A stretch of DNA of 64,000 nt. Source: Mytilus californianus. Taxonomy: Eukaryota. The position numbers were made by a program, and so were the translations under genes. The DNA is taken from NCBI RefSeq assembly GCF_021869535.1, contig NW_026262701.1:44516001-44580000 (forward strand), given 5' to 3'. Shown here one piece after another: positions 1 through 35,939 of the stretch. The first letter of the stretch is position 1; each line of letters begins with the position of its first letter. The notes under the pieces were generated by a model. The model was not told the origin of the DNA, did not search any database, and saw only the letters and a list, made by a program, of their open reading frames with translations.

Positions 1-53
1 AAAATTGGTATCCCATGAATTATTATGAATCCACAGTACTATATTATACTTAC

Positions 54-151
54 TTAAGGTTAGGTTTAGTAGAACCAATTTTTTTAAGAAGCCCAGCAAT
101 CCTATCTAGTTTATCATGTTCTTTAGAATTTTTCATTGTAGAGATGACATC
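54..151 (-). CDS. Coiled-coil protein exon (DVISTMKNSKEHDKLDRIAGLLKKIGSTKPNL); gene continues beyond the window
   Basis: Acceptor catattttcag, donor AA|GTAAGT, 98 nt, phase 0 to 2, open frame. Confidence 0.85.
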
Positions 152-684
152 CTGAAAATATGAAAAAATATTTTTACATGGTACATTCCAAAGTTTCCAA
201 TCATAAATCATAACATTAATTATTCAATTGCCATAAAGAAATAATTGTTCAATTCTCATGTAATTTCTGTTCCCTCATGACTGCAGTCACTTATTCATCT
301 GTAAATACAGTACAGTTCATAAAAATATTTAAAATAGGTCCCAATTGTGGTGATTTCAGAACCAATATTGACACTGTCATGGGGTATTTATCATAATATT
401 GATAAATATTGTCCAATCAGGAACTAAGCTAAATTAATATTTTTCTTTTTTTCAGGTATCCAATTGACTCTTCAACATTAAAATTTATGATTAAAACCTG
501 TACTTTCAACAGATCTAAGACTTTAAGATAGTTAAGTGCACTATTCCAATTAGTGATTTCTCCTTTACTATAAATCTCATATCATTGCACTTACTTTATT
601 TTGCAAAAATGGCCATCACCAAACTTTATTTTTTTATTTTTCAAGAAACTTTTCTATTTGTTTAATTGAAATTTCTTTTTTTAC

Positions 685-717
685 CTCCATGCAAATCAAC
701 TTTCTACTGATCAATGA
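685..717 (-). CDS. 33-nt in-frame micro-exon candidate (SLISRKLICME)
   Basis: Acceptor atgttttgcag, donor GAG|GTAAAA, phase 0 to 0, no stop codon. Confidence 0.55.
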
Positions 718-791
718 CTGCAAAACATATTGTATGGTTTTATAGAAAAATTTCATAATGTAAAGAAGTTTTTTCCGGTTATTATGTATAC

Positions 792-935
792 CTTTGCCAA
801 GTCTAATGCTTTAGATTTCTGAACAACCAAGCAATCCTTTCCTAACATGATCCTTTTTAATGCCACATTCTCATTATGAGCTATAACTATATCTTCTCTT
901 AATTTTTCTGTTTGTTCCACATCTTGTTCTACATC
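792..935 (-). CDS. Coiled-coil protein exon (DVEQDVEQTEKLREDIV...KALDLAK)
   Basis: Acceptor gtgattttcag, donor AAG|GTATAC, 144 nt, phase 0 to 0; lies within ORF 753..974. Confidence 0.9.
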
Positions 936-1424
936 CTGAAAATCACAAACGAAATAAAAAACATCACAAATCATTTTTAATATGATGATTTGATTTAATA
1001 AATATTATATTAATTTAAAAAAATCTTAATCAATGCCATTGTCACTAACCCTAATTTTTTCAGTGCATTCTCGCAAAGCCTTCCTTGCATCTGTTGCCAT
1101 TTAAACTTACCCATAACTTATTATCCTTTGCATTCACAAACAGCAATGTGCTTACCCTAAGATTATCTTTGAATTCTATGGAAACCATCCACAGTTACCT
1201 TGATTTAATCCACAGCCTTCATAGGAATTCTCAAAAAAAAAATTTCGCTGGTGGTCTTTGGAAAAAAATCTACTGGTACTCACTAACATTTCTATTGCAA
1301 AATACCAAAATTGTGTCTGTTCTTTGCAAAATTTGGTGGTCAAAACCTTCGAAACCGCCACTTTTCAAGAACTCTTCCTCCAGAGCCATGGAATCCAATG
1401 TCATTCATCCTGAGCTTTGTATTC

Positions 1425-2995
1425 TTTCATCAGCCATCCTAGCAGCTAATGTCATTAATCACTTACCCTAAGTTTATTTTTGTATTCTCCCACAGACTTC
1501 CTAGCAGCCAATGTCATAAATCACTTACCCTAAGTTTATCTTTGTATTCCCTCACAGACTTCCTAGCAGCCAATGTCATTAATCACTTACCCTAAGTTTA
1601 TCTTTGTATTCCCCCACAGCCTTCCTAGCAGCCAATGTCATTAATCACTTACCCTAAATTTATCTTTGTATTCTCCCACAGCCTTCCTAGCAACCAATGT
1701 CACTAATCACTTACCCTAAGTTTATCTTTGTATTCTCCCACAGCCTTCCTAGCAGCCAATGTCATTAATCACTTACCCTAAGTTTATCTTTGTATTCTCC
1801 AACAGCCTTCCTAGCAGCCAATGTCATTAATCACTTACCCTAAGTTTATCATTGTATTCTCTAACAGCCTTCCTAGCAGCCAATGTCATTAATCACTTAC
1901 CCTAAGTTTATCTTTGTATTCCCCCACAGCCTTCCTAGCAGCCAATGTCATTTATCACTTACCCTAAGTTTATCTTTGTATTCCCCCACAGCCTTACTAG
2001 CAGGCGATGTCATTAATCACTTACCCTAAGTTTATCTTTGTATTCTCTAACAGCCTTCCTAGCAGCCAATGTCATTAATCACTTACCCTAAGTTTATCTT
2101 TGTATTCCCCCACAGCCTTCCTAGCAGCCAATGTCATTTATCACTTACCCTAAGTTTATCTTTGTATTCCCCCACAGCCTTCCTAGCAGCCAATGTCATT
2201 AATCACTTACCCTAAGTTTATTTTTGTATTCCCCAACAGCCTTCCTAGCAGCCAATGTCATTAATCACTTACCCTAAGTTTATCTTTGTATTCTCTAACA
2301 GCCTTCCTAGCAGCCAATGTCATTAATCACTTACCCTAAGTTTATCTTTGTATTCTCCCACAGCCTTCCTAGCAGCCAATGTCATTAATCACTTACCCTA
2401 AGTTTATCTTTGTATTCTCCCACAGCCTTCCTAGCAGCCAATGTCATTAATCACTTACCCTAAGTTTATCTTTGTATTCTCTAACAGCCTTCCTAGCAGC
2501 CAATGTCATTAATCACTTACCCTAAGTTTATCTTTGTATTCTCCCACAGCCTTCCTAGCAGCCAATGTCATTAATCACTTACCCTAAGTTTATCTTTGTA
2601 TTCTCCCACAGCCTTCCTAGCAGCCAATGTCATTAATCACTTACCCTAAGTTTATCTTTGTATTCCCCCACAGCCTTACTAGCAGCCAATGTCATTAATC
2701 ACTTACCCTAAGTTTATCTTTGTATTCTCCCACAGTCTTCCTAGCAGCCAATGTCATTAATCACTTACCCTAAGTTTATCTTTGTATTCTCCCACAGCCT
2801 TCCTAGCAGGCGATGTCATTAATCACTTACCCTAAGTTTATCTTTGTATTCTCCCACAGCCTTCCTAGCAGCCAATGTCATTAATCACTTACCCTAAGTT
2901 TATCATTGTATTCTCTAACAGCCTTCCTAGCAGCCAATGTCATTAATCACTTACCCTAAGTTTATCTTTGTATTCTCCCACAGCCTTCCTAGCTG
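1425..2995 (-). repeat. 62-bp minisatellite, 25 copies, derived from an exon 3' end plus splice donor
   Basis: Motif cacttaccc recurs every 62 bp from 1460 to 2948 (24 x 62). Minus-strand unit: gtaagtgattaatgacattggctgctaggaaggctgtgggagaatacaaagataaacttagg. Confidence 0.97.
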
Positions 2996-3098
2996 CCACC
3001 AGTAAAGCTGTCTTCTCATTGGATTCCTGTTTGTAAGCATCTATTTCTTCCTTCAGTTCCTTTATTTCATCTTTTAACCTTGGTATTGTTTCTAAGTT
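2955..3098 (-). CDS. Coiled-coil protein exon (NLETIPRLKDEIKELKEE...GEYKDKLR)
   Basis: Acceptor acttttcttcag, donor AGG|GTAAGT, 144 nt, phase 0 to 0. Its 3' end is the first unit of the 62-bp minisatellite. Confidence 0.9.
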
Positions 3099-3307
3099 CT
3101 GAAGAAAAGTTTGTATTCAATTTATTAAAACCTGATTATGAAAACTTTGTTGTACTCCCTTCAAACCTTAATACCTAAATATTTTTAACAAATGATTTTA
3201 GCACTGTTCCTTTGCTTTTCATGTGCACAAAGTGATTTGTGTCATGAATTGATACAACATATCCTTTTTCCTTTAAAAAATGCAGGTAAATCTTTGAACA
3301 CTGTTGA

Positions 3308-3563
3308 GGGGGCCTCGGTGGACAAGTGGTCTAAGGAGTCATAATTCTGTATCACTAGCCTGCCAACACTCAGATTGTGAGTTTGAACCCCACACGTGGT
3401 AGGTGCATTCGATTTCAATCTTGATTGACTAGGATTGTCAGATTTCCTGCCGACGGTTGATTATTCTCTCCGGGCAATCTGGCTGCCTCCACAATTAACA
3501 ACTGACTGCCATGAAATAGCTAATAGTGCTGATAGTGGCTTTAAACACCAATCAATCAATCAA
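3308..3563 (+). mobile_element. tRNA-derived SINE
   Basis: A-box-like tggacaagtgg, B-box-like gagtttgaacc, (caat)n tail; homologous copy at 7958. Confidence 0.75.
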
Positions 3564-6164
3564 ATGAAGACTGTTCATGGATTTCCCCATGTTTTTTCTG
3601 ATTTTTTTGGTGTTGTAAGGATTCATTGATTGTATATATACACTGAATATTTTTTTTGTAAGTAGCAATTTGGTAAAATTTCTCAAATTCTGAAGATTTC
3701 ATACTTTTTAAGATCACTGACAGACCAGGATGTAAAAATCTAAAGAATATCTTTGGTAAGACTCCGACTCCCTTTTTTCAAAGAGGCAAAACTTAATTAA
3801 ATTACTTCGGTAAATTTCCAGTTTCCTCAGTAAACTTCAAATATAAAATTTTGTAGGGCATAGTTGTCTAAAGCCAATCAGTAAATTCACTTACCTCTTC
3901 AAATCAACCCCTATTGTTTCTAAATATAAAGCACACATAGATTCCCTTAAGTGTCTTGGAAAGGAGAAAAAGGTCTGGATGCATGTATAGGTCATAAGAT
4001 GGCTTAACAGCCATCTGCTCCCAAAACAGATTATGTTAATAATGAATAAATATATTGTAGTACTGTATTAGGGTGTGTATAATACACACTTTCCCCCCAA
4101 GACATATAATTGATAGTCAGAGAGGATGCATATTATACACAACTGTAAACTCTACAGACGTTTTTTTTTATAAATAATATAATGGGTTTTTTTCATTACT
4201 GTATATATTCAAAGAGTTTTTTTATATTCAAATTTTTTTATTTTCATAAATGATGATTTTTTTTTTTTGTGATATTCAAAACTCTAAAATTTATAGTCTC
4301 TAATATCACCTTTATTTTTAAAATGGGTGCATGGTCATTTCCAATTCTTGAAGGGCTGTTAAAGACATTGATATTACAATTCCAGTGGGTGGTTGGAAAA
4401 TTAATCAAATTTTCAAAACTATAAACTGAAAATTGTCTTAATCTTGAGTAATTTAGAGAATGAAATGTATTATAAACACATGTCTATTGTAAAAGATTAT
4501 AATTTGCCATCCTAGTCCGTGTTCTTTTTGTTGATATGTTTTTGGGTTGCTGGCCCATTGTCATATATGCCACATTTCCATTTATTTGTATTCTAATTGT
4601 CATTAAATCGATTTTGGAACAGGCCAGAGAAAAATTCATGCAGTTTCTATAACTGGAGTTATTGCATGTACAATATGGCTAAGTTTAGAAACATAATTGT
4701 TTTCTTGACTATAACATTTATCGCTACATTTGAATCAAGTACAATGAAATAGTTTTAATGTGCAATTTTAAAAAAACTGGACCACAAAACGCATTTCCTT
4801 TCCATCATAGAGCAATAAATGAACAATTAAATAAATGAGAATGGAATATATAGATTGAGGCATGCTAGTATAACATCAAATACACATTCAGTTAGAAACA
4901 CTTTTTGTTTCTTTAATTGGCTGCAATTAAGGTACATTACATAGCAGGTGTCAAGGGCTCTTCTCAACAACAGAAAAGTTTAAAAAATCTTAAAAGTATT
5001 TTTAACCATTAGAAATATGTGTGCATAATGATACAGAAATGTTTTATGACAGATACATATTTTTTTTTAATTGACAGAAATATAATTAGGAATCTTCACC
5101 TAACTACACATTCATATAAAGAGACTTCAATAAAACATTTTATCTCAATTTTAGTTCTTTCAGTTTATTTGATATTACAAGCTGAAAATTATTCAATTAC
5201 TTTCTGTTATTTTCTATGATCTAAAAAACTATATTCATAATGTGTTAATAAACCAGTTCTGAATATCAAAGATGTTTTCAGCAACAATAGACAAAAGTTT
5301 AAACAGAAATCTAACATTTATACAAGTGAAAACCTATAAGTAGTGTATTAGGTGTCACATCTTCATATAAAGTTCAAAATAAAATGTTAAAACCCAAATT
5401 AAAAAAAATAAAAATTTAATTAAACCATTTTAATTTTTCTTACAAAAGCAATGATTCACAGAAGAAAACATTATATATGATTAATATTTTTGGACTGGTT
5501 CCTGGTGTTTATTGATTCTTTACATGTCAATAATGTCACCCAGCTGTAAAATTTAATGGCTTTTTAAAGATTACATTTTACATCTCCATTTAAAGATTTA
5601 ATGTGCTCTGATCTATATCACTATGTATCAGATCAACTGGAATAATTCAACCTTTCACACATTTTGAAAATAACAACCTGACATTTAACTGAATATTATT
5701 AGATATCTAAGAGATCTGAACGTGGACCACTATTCTTTTAAGAGGTGTTGTCAGTTCTTTTATGTAGGCATAATATTCCTTTGAAATTGATATTTAAGAA
5801 AATTTTCAGTTGACAAAAAAAGTAAAAATTTGTTTTTTTATAATGTACAGGTTTTCTTTTCAAATAATTTCATATTCCTTTTTGGTATTACTTTTGGTGA
5901 CCTCACTTCATGCTCTTCGTCAGTTGAAAATTCTAAATTTCAAATATTTTGTTTTGTTAATTGATTGCCATCTGCATGTAATGTTTGTCAATAAACATGA
6001 ATCAGACTTAGGACAATATTTAGGTTTAGCACCACTGAATAGGCATTTTTTTTAAATGTGTATATTCTACCTAGTGTAAATTATATAAATAATATGTGTA
6101 AGCAATTAGAACTCTTCATTATTTGCTGATAACTTGATATCTTATAATTTCACTAATTACTTCG

Positions 6165-7146
6165 CCATCTTGTAATCTAACTGATAACTTGGGTATCTTG
6201 TAATCTAACTATAACTTGGGAATCTGGAAATCTAACTGATTACTTGAGTATCTTGTAAGCTAACTGATTACTTGGGTATCTTGTAATCTAACTGATTACT
6301 TGGGTATCTTGTAATCTAACTGATTACTTGTGTATCTTGTAATCTAACTGATTACTTGACTATCTTGTAATCTAACTGATTACTTGGGTATCTTGTAATC
6401 TAACTGATTACTTGAGTATCTAGTAATCTAACTATAACTTGGGTATCTTGAAATCTAACTGATTACTTGAGTATCTTGTAATCTAACTGATTACTTGGGT
6501 ATCTTGTAATCTAACTGATTACTTGGGTATCTTGTAATCTAACTGATTACTTGGGTATCTTGTAATCTAACTGATTACTTGACTATCTTGTAATCTAACT
6601 GATTACTTGGGTATCTTGAAATCTAACTGATTACTTGACTATCTTGTAATCTAACTGATTACTTGGGTATCTTGTAATCTAACTGATTACTTGAGTATCT
6701 TGTAATCTAACTTATTAGATGGGTATCTTGTAATCTAACTGATTACTTGAGTATCTTGTAATCTAACTGCTAATTCAGTAGCTTGTAATCTAACTGATTA
6801 CTTGAGTATCTTGTTATTTAACTGATTACTTGAGTATCTTGTAATCTTAATTATTACTTGGTATCTTGTAATCTAACTGATTACTTGAGTATCTTGTAAT
6901 CTAACTGATTACTTGAGTATCTTGTGATCTAACTGATAACTTGAGTATCTTGTAATCTAACTGATTACTTGAGTAGCTTGTAATCTAAATAATTACTTGT
7001 GTACCTTATAATTTCACTGATTATTTATGTATTTTGTTATTTCCTTGATCACTTGAATATCATGTAATTTTACTGATTACTTGAGTAGCTTGTTATTTTA
7101 CTAATAACTTGAGTATCTTGTTATTTTACTGATTACTTGAGTATCT
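6165..7146. repeat. 28-bp minisatellite, about 35 copies, degenerating at both ends
   Basis: Unit tacttg(gg/ag/ac)tatcttgtaatctaactgat. Confidence 0.95.
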
Positions 7147-7957
7147 TTCCATTTTGTTTTAAGACCAGCTTCATTGTATAGGACTGTTTTGTCAGATCTG
7201 TAAAGATTTGATCAAAATAACTCCCTTGTCAAATTCAGTATTGTAGATTTGGGACAACTTTAAAAAAGTTATGATCTGAATAAAATGTAACCAACCAACA
7301 ACATTAAATATTTTACATAGACTATATTCTTGTTGTTGGATGGCTGTCACAGATTAAGTAGACTTAGCATGCAAAAGTATTTTCTGTAAAATTTAGTACT
7401 ACAAACAAAAACAAAAACAGTGATGTAAGCATTATAAGATAATTCGTTTTTAACATATGTCACATCTATATATATATGAAATAGAAAAGAATGCATGTTG
7501 CCCTTTTAACATTTGAAGGCTTAAATGACTTAAAATCTTCACCAATAATTGCAATTTAGACTATGTTTACATTTGATATGAATGTTCATTTCAACCAAAT
7601 GTCCTTGTATATTAAACATAGCCAAAACTTTGAATATCTAATGTTTATGGAGAGATTATTAAAGTCATTTAAACCTAAGCAGACCTTAGAATTGTAAATG
7701 TATCAATGTATTATCCTCTCAATGCTCTCCTATTTACCATGTAGTTTTAACTACAATTAAAAGGATTTCTCATTTAAAAATATTTTTATTTCATTTCAGT
7801 CAAATTGAAAATTACTTAAAATTGTTTTGTCTTCTGCAATTTGTCTACATACCATTTCCCTTAACCTAGTTGTAGAAAATGTCAAGAAATCAATATGGTG
7901 ATTTTTAGCATATATATGCTTTAGTTATCAATAATTAACTTTAAAAACATGCATAGT

Positions 7958-8882: not shown

Positions 8883-8978
8883 CTTTTCAATATTTTCGTT
8901 CCTCATTAGTTCATGTCTAACTTGATATTTCAAGTCTGTTAACTTTTCTCCCATTTCTATGATTTTATTATTGGCAGC
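8883..8978 (-). CDS. Coiled-coil protein exon (AANNKIIEMGEKLTDLKYQVRHELMRNENIEK)
   Basis: Acceptor gttttatttcag, donor AAG|GTACGA, 96 nt, phase 0 to 0. Confidence 0.9.
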
Positions 8979-9558
8979 CTGAAATAAAACATTTATAAAT
9001 AGTTACTTTTGATTCCTAAATTTGTTTAACATGTTTTAATTATTTGAAGTAGTATTAATGAGTTTTCTCCCCTTTTTCTGTTGTTTATAGCCCTTTCCAG
9101 GAACTCATTTGTGGAATCATGAATTTTACTCTATAATTATAATTTAAAGCATTCCCTTGTTTGGCAGGAGAACTGTTTTACAGCAATGAAGCTCAATAAA
9201 GGGTCCATGATTAGTGGTTTTGAATTCCTGTGCATTAAAAGAACAAATTTGGAAAATATGAATGTTTTATTAGCATTCCAAAATTCTTGTCAACAAACTA
9301 GAGTATAAAGCTTGAAATAATTGTAAATTTAAGTAAAACATAGTTTTCAATTTCTTCTCACTATTGCTCTGCACTGCAGCAAACCAGTATTTATTCCAGT
9401 ATACTATAGTGAACGAACATATCTTTAATTTAAATGCAATTTTTAAATCAGATTTGAATTTCAGAAGAGAGTTTATTGAAAGTGCTATAGATCAGGAGCT
9501 CTTTTCCCAAAGTTTTTTTTCTGAAATGATAATGACTTACAAGTACTTCCTCTACTAA

Positions 9559-20814: not shown

Positions 20815-20974
20815 CTGCAGAAGAAATAAATACAATAACTATGACATACAGTTTCAATAAAATATATATTATACATTAAGTTTTCAAGCTTTCACTAAAA
20901 ACTGCACACTCTCCTGGTGGTACTCTCAGCATATAGGTTCAATAAAATTATAAATTTATATAATATATAATTAC

Positions 20975-21252
20975 CTTGCTTTTAAATCCATTTTAAAATT
21001 TAAATTAGCAGTGCTACTACCCCTCCTCATGATATGATCATTGGCCATTTTAAAAACAGAATTACGCTTCTGAGAAAACGCATGATTTTTTTCTGGAGCA
21101 ACTACACTGGTATCATCAGGTAGATCACTTGATATTGAGGACTCCACAGAAGGACTGCGTAATCTGGGACTACTAAAACTATCCCTACTCTCCAATTCTA
21201 TATCCTGTGACTCTTCTTTGTTTTCGTGTACCAAATGTTCATTTTCCATCAT
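20975..21252 (-). CDS. Coiled-coil protein gene, proximal first coding exon (MMENEHL...MDLKA-R), acidic and Ser-rich N-terminus
   Basis: ATG at 21252 with an in-frame TAA just upstream. Donor AG|GTAATT at 20974 in phase 2 joins in frame to the exon starting at 20814. Confidence 0.8.
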
Positions 21253-23116
21253 GTAGCGTACTTAAAACTTATATATATCTTCTTTTTTTTTTATCAATCC
21301 TACTTTTTAAATTCAAATAACGAATTTTCCAGTTGAATATATAAATCCTATATCTATTTATTCAACATCATTCAAATTGTTGTAAGCTTTACATTACATG
21401 TAATTCAAACACCATCCATCATGTTAAATGTAAAATTAATAATTCAAGGATGATATACAATGAAACAGAACATTTTGTATCCTAATCTGTTGCTCTCAAA
21501 ACGACATATCACTTCAAATCTGAATACTGTTCATATCAGCTTGCACTCGATGGGACAAGGTGATAGAAATATTGATAATAAATCCAACAATTGCAACCTT
21601 CCTTTAGTTTCTGATAATGGTATCCAGTTAAAAGGATCGGAAATCGTATATAAAAGTTTAGGAATTATTTCACCAATACACTTATTGTGTACACTCCTAA
21701 CATGAACTCGTAAATTATATGTTAAAAACTTAATGACTAAATTAGCAACAGTAAAATCAGCGAAATGAATGACTGCTTATGAATTGCTTTCTATTATTTA
21801 TTGTCACTTTTCCTTTTAAGATAGCCATCAGTCTCGTAATTTTTTGCATGGAATTTTTATTTATTCAGAAACGTAGGTAAATGGGTTTATTACAAATTTG
21901 CGACCCTAATGACAATTCTAAGTGGACCTAATCAATGCATCAAACATTTCCAAATGGAAAAAGGATCAAAGAATTTAATTCTAAATGATAAATGGGCTGG
22001 TTATGAGATCTAGAAATTATAATATAATTTCTCTATTGTTAATGTTAACAGTCAAACAAGTTAATTAATAACAAGTAATTAGTTCGTTAAAATAGAACAG
22101 AGTGCAAACTATATGCTATTCATTGATGAATAAAATTTGTTTTGGAAGTAAATCAGTACAATCAAAACACTGTGTAAAGTCCATTAACTTATTCTAACCT
22201 ACATTTAAAAGGACATGAAAACTTTAAATTTACAGTAATACTGAACATAAAATTAACTAGGTCTCTCAAAATTACTAAATAGATATAAACAAAACTGTTA
22301 CATGGGAATCATTTGCAAGCAGATAAAAAAAAAAGAAAAAGAAAAGAAAAGAAAAGAGTTCCAATATTCTCTCTTTGCATGTTAATATTTTATCTGTCCA
22401 AGGGCAATAACTAAAACATTTTCTGTTTGTTTTGGTTCTTTAAAACCTTTTAAAAATATCTTTGAGAAATCAAGTATCTATACAAATCCTTGGAGAAATG
22501 TAAGCTTGAGAGTAATTCATAAAATACAATTATAATTGATTTTTCCAAGGGGCATAACTCTTTTTAAAAAAAGTTGATTGCCACTGACTTATCTGAGTTT
22601 CTAATTATTGCTGATATACGCCCTCGATATTAACTTCATTAATATCTGGCAAGAATAGTACATGAACAAGCAGTTACAATGCAATTTTTGTTTATAGAAT
22701 TTTCATTTTTCAAAGGGAGATCACTCCTGAAAAAATTAATTGATCAGCACTGAGTTTTGAATATATCCCAAACATTGCTGATACAAACCTTTACTATAAG
22801 TTTGATAAAAATCTGGCAATAATTGTAACTTCAGACTGTAAGCCATTATACAATGCAATTTTACATATAATTATTTCCAAAGTGCATAAATCTTTTTAAA
22901 AAGTTAGCCGGCACTGATTTTCGAATTTGACTGAGACATTGTTAATATAAATTTCATAATAATCTGGAAAGAATTGTACACTTCATAGCACTAACAATGC
23001 AATTTTCCATAAAATTAATATTTCCTAGTGGCATAATTCTTTAAAATAAAATGCTCCGCTGGGCGCAGCTTGATACGACCGCAGAGGTCGAACCCTGAAC
23101 AGTTGGGGTAAGTATG

Positions 23117-33944: not shown

Positions 33945-35793
33945 TGGGGAGTTTGTCTCCCCAAAAATTGGTAATGTTGGCCGATCTGAGGAGGACAACG
34001 ACAAAGAGGTTGTAAAGTTGATTATTGCGATAACAATTGAGCTGCGTCCGATAGCAATCGTCCTTATGCAAATGAATATCAATACATCTGTTAACCAATT
34101 TTGGGTTTAAAAAAATTTCTACGGAAAGTATGTAACTTTTTAAAAATTGAGTTGTTATAAGAATCCTACAAAAAAAACCAAAATTGATCTTTTATTTCGT
34201 ATTTGAATGTACCGAAATTAGTCAAAGTCATATACATGTACATGTACATGTATACCTGAACTTGCATAAGGTCGATTTCTATCCGATGCAGCTCATTTAT
34301 AGAATTCTACCTTTGAAAAGAACTGTTCATATTAATAGGTGGATAATGAGGATTATTACTATAATAAAGATTTTTTGTTTGAAAAGAAATGCACAAACTT
34401 TAAGTGAAGAACACCCATGATTGTGTTACACAAATTTGTAATAAGAAACCAATGATTTATATAGAAGTTACTATATAAATCCTTGAAGAAACCAAAGAAA
34501 AAAATATATAAAAACACAAAATAAAAGTATCCATTTTATATTAAGAAAGATATGTTGAAGATAAAGAAATTGTACAAATGTTCCTATAATGAAACAAATC
34601 AATTGACACAGTATATGTTTGTTCACTGGATTAAAGGACTACTTCAGACAAAATGTAAATTGTCCAGTGATAAAAGTCTCATTTCACACCTATGCTTAAA
34701 GGGGTACCAGATAGATAAAAATATTACTTCATACTTGTGTTAAAAGGGTACCAGACAAAGAGTCTGCCTTTTCCTATCAGTGCTCAAAAGGGAACCAGTC
34801 ATACAAAAGTCTTTTTTCACACCTTTGCTGAAAAGAGTACCAGATTTTATGTTTGCCAAATTTTATTGCATGTATTTTTTTAAGCAGACCAATGTCCACT
34901 TTCAAGTAAATTGGAAACGAATACATAATTTTCAATCGAAGTGCATTTACCTTTTTCTACAGACAATAAAAGTTTTTCTGCAATGAGAACTTTAAAAAAG
35001 GTGTTATTTCCAATTTTGAGCAAATTGTATAACAACCAAAGTTTGATGCTTGAATGGACATATCAGCAGCATTAAAACACTAAGGTGACCTAGCTGTTCT
35101 AGCAGAGAGAGAATGAAAATAGCAGCAGCAAAGAAGGTAGCCTTTTGATACTATATAATGAAACTAATGAAACAAAACTTATTCAAAAGTGGGTGGTCTC
35201 TGTTATATTTATTCATAACTTGTTTCAACTTTGTTAATTAGGCTACTTGCAATATGGTTCAGACATGTGATTGTACATTGTTGAAGACTGTCTGTTGACA
35301 AACCAGATGTATTTTGTTTGTGTTGTTGGGGTGCTGTTTCGTTGATGTTTATATAACCCTCATCTCCTTTCATTCAAAATGCTTACTAAAAATTAATTTA
35401 TTCTTACTCATTTCCATGGAAATAGAATGGTATCACATGCATGATCTTAGTTATTTATCACCATGGAGAACGATGACAACAAAATAGTTCTTAGTGATCC
35501 TATCATGGTCATTAATATTGATGATTGTCAAATTGATATAAAAGTTGGAAAAAATGAAAAAGTGCACCTTAAATCAATTTATCATCTTTTGCAACATTTA
35601 TTGGTGAGATGCAACTTTCTGGTCAAATATTACAATAGATCAGATATTCAAAAGATTTAAGTACAACCCCCCCTTTTATACCCCCAAATATGGTCTCCTT
35701 TCAAAAAAAGAAGAAAAAAAATAGAGACAGAATATTCAAAGACAACAGAAATCATTACTTAAAAACATTTCCATAGAAACGAAGACTGATTAC

Positions 35794-35939
35794 CTGTTTT
35801 CCTGTACTTTTTTCTCGTCCTGCTTTTTCTGATCCATAAGATGCCGTGCTAAGCTAGCAATATTGAACTTTTTTATGGGATTAACTTTCACATGTCCAGG
35901 AGACTCAGGTCTACAGGTTTCACTCGAACTTACAGACAT
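35794..35939 (-). CDS. Candidate upstream or alternative first exon (MSVSSSETCRPESPGHVKVNPIKKFNIASLARHLMDQKKQDEKKVQEN-R)
   Basis: ATG preceded by an in-frame TAA, 48 open codons with protein-like composition, donor AG|GTAATC in phase 2, compatible with the 20814 acceptor. Confidence 0.6.

What the first reader, a model, noticed from the sequence alone, without database searches (positions are those of the whole stretch)
1425..2995. Minisatellite made of 25 tandem copies of an exon end and its 5' splice site
Seen: the 62-bp unit is the last part of exon 3098-2955 (coding ARKAVGEYKDKLR) plus AGG|GTAAGT and the first intron bases, leaving 24 extra perfect donors in the intron. Using any downstream donor reads GTA AGT GAT TAA, an immediate in-frame stop. 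Inference: the array may act as a copy-number-tunable splicing/NMD rheostat or U1 snRNP decoy cluster, or the cell needs a way to pick the first of 25 identical donors.
Basis: partly seen in the sequence, partly recalled or inferred. Interest (0 to 1): 0.75.

Follow-up and report, generated by a model that had tools for sequence, protein, structure and literature searches.

The report
Silent splice-donor minisatellite in mussel gene
In a California mussel gene, the last 43 bases of a coding exon and its splice donor are copied 25 times in tandem into the intron. The available RNA uses only the first donor, so this is one more example of a known and probably harmless repeat type ("mirage" minisatellites, as in human F7), not a demonstrated regulatory device.

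Summary
A 62-bp unit (43 nt of exon end plus 19 nt of intron) is repeated 25.5 times at 1415-2998 on the minus strand. It gives 25 identical AGG|GTAAGT donors spaced exactly 62 bp apart. Read-through past the first donor stops at once (VSD*).

The gene is Mytilus californianus LOC127702297, a conserved ~680-aa coiled-coil protein with a C-terminal CAP-Gly domain. The exon is coding exon 7 of 14.

A spliced transcript contig joins exon 7 to exon 8 from the first donor and skips the whole array. All 22 annotated isoforms and gene products retrieved from five Mytilus species carry the same junction.

The array is lineage-specific. M. coruscus has about 19 copies, roughly half with mutated donors. 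M. edulis and M. galloprovincialis have only 3-4 decayed relic units. An unnamed mytilid-like contig has a different array at the same boundary. Pinctada and Tegillarca have none there.

The type is already described: amphioxus "mirages", and human F7, IFI6, CBS, LMNB2 and PDGF. This scan has noted it repeatedly in this genome on other genes.

The rheostat and U1-decoy ideas have no support. Low-level use of the extra donors could not be measured.

The parts
1415..2998 (-). 62-bp x 25.5 tandem array. The first unit is the exon end plus the authentic donor; 24 further units lie in the intron.
   Evidence: TRF; unit-by-unit table; nhmmer with a unit profile finds 25 full units.
2955..3098 (-). 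Coding exon 7 of 14 (144 nt, 48 aa, NLETIPRL...GEYKDKLR) of LOC127702297, a coiled-coil CAP-Gly protein.
   Evidence: Translation; transcript contig piece 2954-3100; tblastn of XP_052062395.1. The exon and its end are conserved in Pinctada, Tegillarca and other molluscs.
2949..2957 (-). Authentic 5' splice site AGG|GTAAGT, the only donor seen in use.
   Evidence: Joint 934/935 to 2954/2955 with GT..AG ends in the X10 contig at depth 21.8; the joined form is absent from DNA runs X1 and X3.
1448..2935 (-). 24 intronic units, each with a pseudo-donor whose 9-mer is identical to the authentic one (G of GT at 2892 down to 1466 in steps of 62). Each unit also holds a weak AG (ctgctag|G) 34 nt upstream of its donor.
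   Evidence: sequence read.
936..2954 (-). Intron 7, 2019 nt, phase 0. Of this, 1488 nt is the young array.
   Evidence: Joint. The orthologous introns are 1427 nt (M. coruscus), 613 nt (M. edulis) and 627 nt (M. galloprovincialis).
1397..1446 (-). First decayed relic unit with its donor lost (GGATGAAT). It is orthologous to the relic that directly follows the exon copy in M. edulis and M. galloprovincialis.
   Evidence: nhmmer E=9e-6; intron alignment.
1032..1224 (-). Three further decayed relic units (1151-1224, 1105-1144, 1032-1089).
   Evidence: nhmmer hits at E=3e-6, 0.03 and 3e-9. Counterparts exist in M. coruscus, M. edulis and M. galloprovincialis.
792..935 (-). Coding exon 8 (144 nt, DVEQDVEQ...ALDLAK), spliced to exon 7.
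54..151 (-). Coding exon 9 (98 nt).
   Evidence: Joint 150/151 to 791/792; tblastn.
8883..8984 (-). Coding exon 6 (approximate limits), upstream partner of exon 7.
   Evidence: The loose end at 3100 in the X10 contig reads ...NENIEK; tblastn.

Best explanation
This is a 'mirage' minisatellite: a tandem array born from a duplication that spanned an exon-intron boundary and then grew by unequal exchange or replication slippage. It is tolerated because the spliceosome commits to the most upstream donor, through exon definition and the 5'-to-3' oriented scanning shown for F7. The 24 copies behind that donor are simply removed with the intron. The array is young and homogenised in M. californianus. 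It is shared with M. coruscus but has turned over there. It sits on top of an older, decayed array that all Mytilus species share. The structure, the origin from the exon, use of the first donor in assembled RNA, and lineage-specific presence are shown. The growth mechanism, the way the first donor is chosen in a mussel, and neutrality are inferred.
For: First-donor junction in a 2175-nt transcript contig; the joined form is absent from DNA runs. All 22 annotated Mytilus isoforms and gene products retrieved read KDKLR|DVEQDVEQ. The exon end is conserved across bivalves and gastropods, so the array derives from the exon and not the reverse. The unit is unique to this locus. M. coruscus has about 19 units with species-specific variants, and 9 of its 16 aligned intronic units have an altered donor 9-mer. 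M. edulis and M. galloprovincialis have no young array, only relics. Other donor-side arrays occur in the same gene: L020:8162-8688 in M. californianus and L026:16160-16671 in Tegillarca. Six of about 78 donor sides carry copies, against 0 of about 78 acceptor sides. Published precedents exist: F7, IFI6, CBS, LMNB2 and PDGF (PMC1557585) and amphioxus mirages that do not disturb splicing (PMC3087553).
Against: All 24 extra donors in M. californianus are untouched, while 15 of the other 53 columns vary. The column-based probability is 0.067, so this is not significant. An array recurs at this same boundary in a second mytilid-like genome with a different unit. That could hint at a hotspot or a benefit, but with about 5% of donor boundaries affected in this gene, coincidence is roughly a 1-in-10 event. 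Contigs drop rare variants, and the raw RNA run gave no reads on the gene, so rare use of pseudo-donors is untested.
Confidence: 0.8

Rival explanations
1. Copy-number-tunable expression. A share of transcripts uses a downstream donor, meets the TAA 12 nt later and is degraded by NMD. More copies would then mean less productive mRNA.
For: All 24 pseudo-donors are identical in 9-mer to the real one, and every one leads to an immediate stop. In human IFI6 and CBS the second and third repeated donors are used (PMC1557585). Copy number differs between species, 25 against about 19.
Against: No such transcript is seen in the assembled RNA or in any retrieved annotation. The M. edulis complex has no array yet the same gene and junction. 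Donors decay in M. coruscus. The same architecture occurs at unrelated exon ends.
Confidence: 0.08
2. The extra U1-binding sites act as an intronic enhancer of exon-7 definition, or as a U1 sink or chromatin-retention element. Selection would then keep or regenerate an array at this boundary in mytilids.
For: Arrays or their relics stand at this boundary in every mytilid locus examined. Two of them have different unit structures. No donor is mutated in M. californianus. From general knowledge, U1 bound just downstream of a 5' splice site can promote exon inclusion (exon-specific U1 work).
Against: Relics in M. edulis and M. galloprovincialis have lost their donors, and the exon is still included in all models. 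Donor columns in M. coruscus are, if anything, more variable than the rest: 6 of 9 against 18 of 53, p=0.08. Outgroups splice the same 144-nt exon without any array.
Confidence: 0.07
3. Assembly artefact: the array is collapsed, expanded or invented by the assembler.
For: No read or contig examined spans the array. Short-read contigs stop at its edges.
Against: An independent assembly of M. coruscus has an array at the same place. Array k-mers are about 14x single-copy depth in DNA run X1. Copies differ by scattered shared variants, as real arrays do.
Confidence: 0.03

Closest known systems
Human F7 intron 7 VNTR (37-bp minisatellite whose first unit spans the exon 7-IVS7 boundary; PMC1557585)
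   Same: The first unit spans the exon-intron border. The authentic donor is followed by identical pseudo-donors, and only the most upstream one is used.
   Different: F7 has 5-9 copies of 37 bp with only 4 exonic bases. Here there are 25 copies of 62 bp with 43 exonic bases, in a mollusc. In F7, donor choice and functionality of the pseudo-sites were tested by mutagenesis. Here only the outcome is seen, in an assembled transcript.
Amphioxus 'mirages' (Adh3, globins BflGb6/BflGb9; PMC3087553)
   Same: Minisatellite-like tandem duplications of exon-intron boundaries in an invertebrate. Units are tens to about 160 bp long. Splicing is regular despite repeated GT/AG signals. They show concerted evolution, decayed array edges and length instability.
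   Different: A different phylum and different genes. Here there is added cross-species evidence of decay, re-expansion and an older relic layer.
Human IFI6 (6-16) intron 2 minisatellite (25 pseudo-sites), as summarised in PMC1557585
   Same: A similar number of reiterated donors behind the authentic one.
   Different: [quoted passage not shown] Here the unit is 62 nt (not a multiple of 3) with stops in all frames, and no such transcript is seen.
Other splice-donor minisatellites noted by this scan in the same genome (UPB1, WDR44, UBE3B, ANKS3 and others)
   Same: Same architecture and same genome. The follow-ups reached the same verdict of a silent mirage.
   Different: Those are unchecked AI notes. 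For this locus there is a transcript junction and a six-species comparison of the orthologous intron.

Membership tests
Mirage / exon-intron-boundary minisatellite (F7 IVS7 type) | Head-to-tail array of a unit of about 10-160 bp with several to tens of copies. | tested here: met
   62 bp x 25.5 copies, 95% matches.
Mirage / exon-intron-boundary minisatellite (F7 IVS7 type) | The first unit spans a real exon-intron boundary, so the authentic splice-site sequence is reiterated in the intron. | tested here: met
   43 exonic plus 19 intronic nt. The exon is confirmed by a transcript contig and a RefSeq protein.
Mirage / exon-intron-boundary minisatellite (F7 IVS7 type) | Regular splicing: only the authentic, most upstream donor appears in mRNA. 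| tested here: met
   Joint 2955 to 935 in the X10 contig; all 22 annotated isoforms and gene products retrieved. Caveat: rare isoforms are not measurable with contigs.
Mirage / exon-intron-boundary minisatellite (F7 IVS7 type) | Length instability (VNTR behaviour) and concerted evolution with decayed edges. | tested here: inconclusive
   Between species the feature is met: 25 against about 19 units, species-specific variants, and decayed distal units. Polymorphism within M. californianus could not be measured, because DNA contigs break at the array.
In-frame alternative-donor ladder (IFI6 type) | Unit length is a multiple of 3 with an open frame, so downstream donors add residues. | tested here: not met
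   62 nt; GTA AGT GAT TAA; stops in all three frames within 15 nt.
Regulated unproductive splicing (poison element coupled to NMD) | Element conserved among related species, with the unproductive isoform detectable. | tested here: not met
   Absent from M. edulis and M. galloprovincialis; donors decaying in M. coruscus; no unproductive isoform in the contig or the retrieved annotations.

The most novel reading that the evidence does not exclude
Arrays of exon end plus donor are regenerated or kept at this particular boundary across Mytilidae: an old relic layer, a re-expansion in M. californianus and M. coruscus, and a differently built 22/151-bp array in another mytilid-like genome. The cause would be either that a run of U1 sites behind exon 7 is useful, or that strong 5' splice sites are themselves hotspots for tandem duplication in bivalve germlines.
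Probability: 0.08. Interest if true: 0.6.

Novelty: new member of a known kind. Interest (0 to 1): 0.25.

Why it matters
On its own this is one more silent mirage minisatellite. It is useful mainly as a natural 25-donor test case for how the first 5' splice site is chosen outside mammals. It also gives a roughly dated example of birth, decay and re-expansion of such arrays. The wider question is why donor-side boundary arrays are so common in mussels, and that needs a genome-wide count rather than this locus.

Tried and rejected
1. Raw RNA reads (X21) gave no coverage of the gene, with about 6% of the run read. Donor usage could therefore not be quantified.

2. DNA contigs (X1, X3) cannot size the array. 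The depth sums are too crude to give a copy number.

3. Dispersed satellite or transposon origin is rejected. The unit is unique to this locus and the exon end is conserved in distant molluscs.

4. I considered that array copies reading GTTAGA (Val-Arg) preserve an ancestral Arg codon. I rejected this because the mytilid-like L024 exon also reads GTGGGA (Gly).

5. Selection on the pseudo-donors shows opposite, non-significant trends in the two species, p=0.067 and p=0.08.

6. M. trossulus and Potamilus loci could not be fetched, because the product was not on record.

7. A fuzzy-regex scan timed out and was replaced by nhmmer.

8. Pfam on single exons gave only sub-threshold CAP-Gly halves, 19.7 and 15.8 bits. 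The domain call rests on those plus the precomputed PF01302 on the full-length orthologues.

Exons were searched one by one by reference, and full-length comparisons used database proteins only.

Full report
**Observation**

Tandem Repeats Finder reports an array at 1415-2998 with period 62, 25.5 copies, 95% matches and no indels. Read on the minus strand, 25 GTAAGT hexamers lie exactly 62 bp apart, with the G of GT at 2954, 2892 ... 1466.

Cutting the array into units gives the consensus GGCTGCTAGGAAGGCTGTGGGAGAATACAAAGATAAACTTAGG|GTAAGTGATTAATGACATT. Only 44 differences occur across 25 units, and none falls in the 9-mer AGG|GTAAGT.

The first unit is the last 43 nt of an open stretch, 3098-2955, that translates to NLETIPRL...ARKAVGEYKDKLR. 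Reading past the donor gives GTA AGT GAT TAA. The other two frames also stop within 15 nt.

**The gene**

- The window is G000:C121:44516001-44580000 of a 1.65-Gb genome.
- The contig length, 122,239,455, equals that recorded for XP_052062395.1, LOC127702297 of Mytilus californianus. That protein maps onto the window and the 20 kb below it as 14 coding exons at about 100% identity. The exon in question is the seventh, residues 219-266.
- The protein is about 680 aa of coiled coil followed by a C-terminal CAP-Gly domain. The two halves of the domain lie on separate exons and each scores below threshold on its own (19.7 and 15.8 bits). PF01302 is precomputed on the full-length orthologues.
- Orthologues exist across bivalves and gastropods. 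All of them keep ...ARKA/S-V/A-R/G-EY/F-K/R-D/E-x-x-R at this point.
- Pinctada and Tegillarca have the same 144-nt exon, with the intron at the same position and phase.

The exon end is therefore ancestral, and the array was copied from it rather than the reverse. The unit occurs nowhere else in the genome, which rules out a dispersed satellite or a transposon.

**Which donor is used**

The one read-laying run covered window 1-6000. Run X10 was labelled only as a guessed RNA run. It holds a 2175-nt contig at depth 21.8 that lies on 3100-2954, 934-791 and 150-54. Its joints skip 2019 and 640 bases and have GT..AG ends on the minus strand.

The joined form is absent from the two DNA runs, so the contig is a spliced transcript. 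It uses the first donor and removes the whole array. Its loose end above 3100 continues into exon 6 (...NENIEK).

All 22 annotated isoforms and gene products retrieved from M. californianus, M. coruscus, M. trossulus, M. edulis and M. galloprovincialis read KDKLR|DVEQDVEQ.

There are limits to this evidence. The raw RNA run X21 gave no reads on the gene, and contigs drop rare variants. Low-level use of donors 2-25 is therefore untested.

**Is the array real DNA?**

Short-read contigs of X1 and X3 stop at the array's edges. Array k-mers in X1 stand at 179.5 against about 13 for single-copy flanks. X1 may be the sample from which the window was assembled, so this is not fully independent support. 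An independent assembly of the sister species carries an array at the same place (below). The exact number 25 remains unverified.

**Comparison of the orthologous intron**

| Species (locus) | Intron length | State of the boundary |
|---|---|---|
| M. californianus (window) | 2019 nt | 25 homogeneous units, then 4 decayed relic units |
| M. coruscus (L021) | 1427 nt | about 19 units, 78-84% matches, with indels |
| M. edulis (L022) | 613 nt | exon copy plus 3-4 decayed relic units, no young array |
| M. galloprovincialis (L023) | 627 nt | exon copy plus 3-4 decayed relic units, no young array |

- The variants in the M. coruscus array are mostly private to that species. Nine of its 16 aligned intronic units have an altered donor 9-mer, for example TTAAGT, GTCAGT and GTAAAG.
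- The relic units in M. edulis and M. galloprovincialis have lost their donors (ATGAAT, GTTCCT, GTAAAA).
- The first relic in those two species is orthologous to the decayed unit that follows the young array in M. californianus (1446-1397). Further relics at 1224-1032 also have counterparts.

The history is therefore in three steps:

1. An old array existed at this boundary in the Mytilus ancestor.
2. That array decayed.
3. The exon-proximal unit re-expanded in the M. californianus / M. coruscus lineage, and turnover then proceeded separately in each species.

**Selection on the extra donors**

In M. californianus none of the 9 donor columns varies, while 15 of the other 53 do. The hypergeometric probability is 0.067. 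In M. coruscus the donor columns are, if anything, more variable: 6 of 9 against 18 of 53, Fisher p=0.08. The two trends point in opposite directions and neither is significant, so there is no consistent sign of selection for or against the extra donors.

**Beyond Mytilus**

An unnamed ENA contig, L024, has a protein 74-83% identical, so it is presumably another mytilid. It carries a differently built array at the same boundary, L024:3699-5094.

- A 22-bp unit (the last 15 nt of the exon, plus GTAAGT, plus T) is nested in a 151-bp unit that holds 85 nt of the exon end.
- The intron contains 25 GTAAGT, and read-through stops immediately (GTA AGT TAA).
- The duplication junctions differ from those in Mytilus. 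This is either an independent event or a remodelled array.

I scanned every exon end of this gene in seven loci. Two more donor-side arrays turned up:

- L020:8162-8688 in M. californianus: 59 bp x 9.1 copies, 82% matches, starting at the end of coding exon 10. M. coruscus has 2 copies there.
- L026:16160-16671 in Tegillarca: 40 bp x 12.9 copies, at another exon.

In all, 6 of about 78 donor sides carry copies and 0 of about 78 acceptor sides do. With about 5% of donor boundaries affected, a second hit on the same boundary in another genus is roughly a 1-in-10 coincidence. That is suggestive of a hotspot but is not proof.

The donor-side bias is what a tolerance model predicts. If the first donor is chosen, a duplication across a donor is harmless. 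A duplication inside an exon, or across an acceptor, would usually change the mRNA. This last point is inference.

**What is known**

- PMC1557585 describes the human F7 IVS7 37-bp VNTR, whose first unit spans the exon 7-intron boundary. The pseudo-donors are functional but silent, and a 5'-to-3' oriented scanning picks the most upstream site.
- Its introduction lists IFI6/6-16 (25 pseudo-sites, the first two of them used), CBS, LMNB2 and PDGF.
- PMC3087553 names such arrays 'mirages' in amphioxus Adh3 and globin genes. It reports regular splicing, length instability, concerted evolution and decayed edges.
- Earlier notes of this scan list at least 15 such arrays in this same genome, with the same verdict wherever they were followed up. 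I took the term 'mirage' from those notes and checked it in the paper.

**Verdict**

- The best explanation is a tolerated boundary minisatellite that is removed with the intron because the first donor is committed (confidence 0.8).
- The rheostat/NMD reading (0.08) and the U1-site enhancer or decoy reading (0.07) are not excluded, but nothing here supports them. Several facts count against them: the array is absent from the M. edulis complex, the donors decay in M. coruscus, and the architecture is generic.
- It is a new member of a known kind, and interest is low to moderate.

Exons were searched one at a time by reference.

Noticed in passing
L020:8162-8688 (G000:C121:44514162-44514688, just below the window), minus strand: A second boundary minisatellite in the same gene: 59 bp x 9.1 copies at 82% matches. 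It starts at the end of coding exon 10 (...CTGTCTTCTCAT|GTAAGT). M. coruscus has 2 copies there.
   Followed up: partly
L024:3699-5094 (unnamed ENA contig, mytilid-like): The same exon-7 boundary carries a differently built array: a 22-bp unit (last 15 nt of the exon plus GTAAGT plus T) nested in a 151-bp unit. There are 25 GTAAGT in the intron. The species was not identified.
   Followed up: partly
L026:16160-16671 (Tegillarca granosa orthologue): A 40-bp x 12.9 array starts at the donor of a different exon (residues about 138-161) of the orthologous gene.
   Followed up: no
window 2979: In DNA run X3 the exon copy reads A instead of C on the + strand. This gives GTT, a synonymous Val codon. 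It is the same variant carried by array units 13 and 20, so it may reflect exchange between the array and the exon. The M. coruscus exon copy likewise shares its GTC variant with two of its intronic units.
   Followed up: partly
window 6126-7147: An unrelated 28-bp x 36.7 minisatellite (87% matches) lies in the middle of intron 6, not anchored at an exon.
   Followed up: no
window 3310-3564: A tRNA-like SINE of about 255 bp with thousands of copies at about 83% identity across the genome (4653 first-look candidates). It dominates read depth in 3401-3600.
   Followed up: no
window 20974-21261 and 35793-35939, minus strand: Two alternative first coding exons of the gene. This accounts for the several annotated isoform lengths.
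   Followed up: no
window 1310-1400: Read depth in 1201-1400 is about 100x single copy in DNA runs, and contig X1-1 ends at 1309. A high-copy repeat fragment therefore lies between the young array and the older relic units.
   Followed up: no
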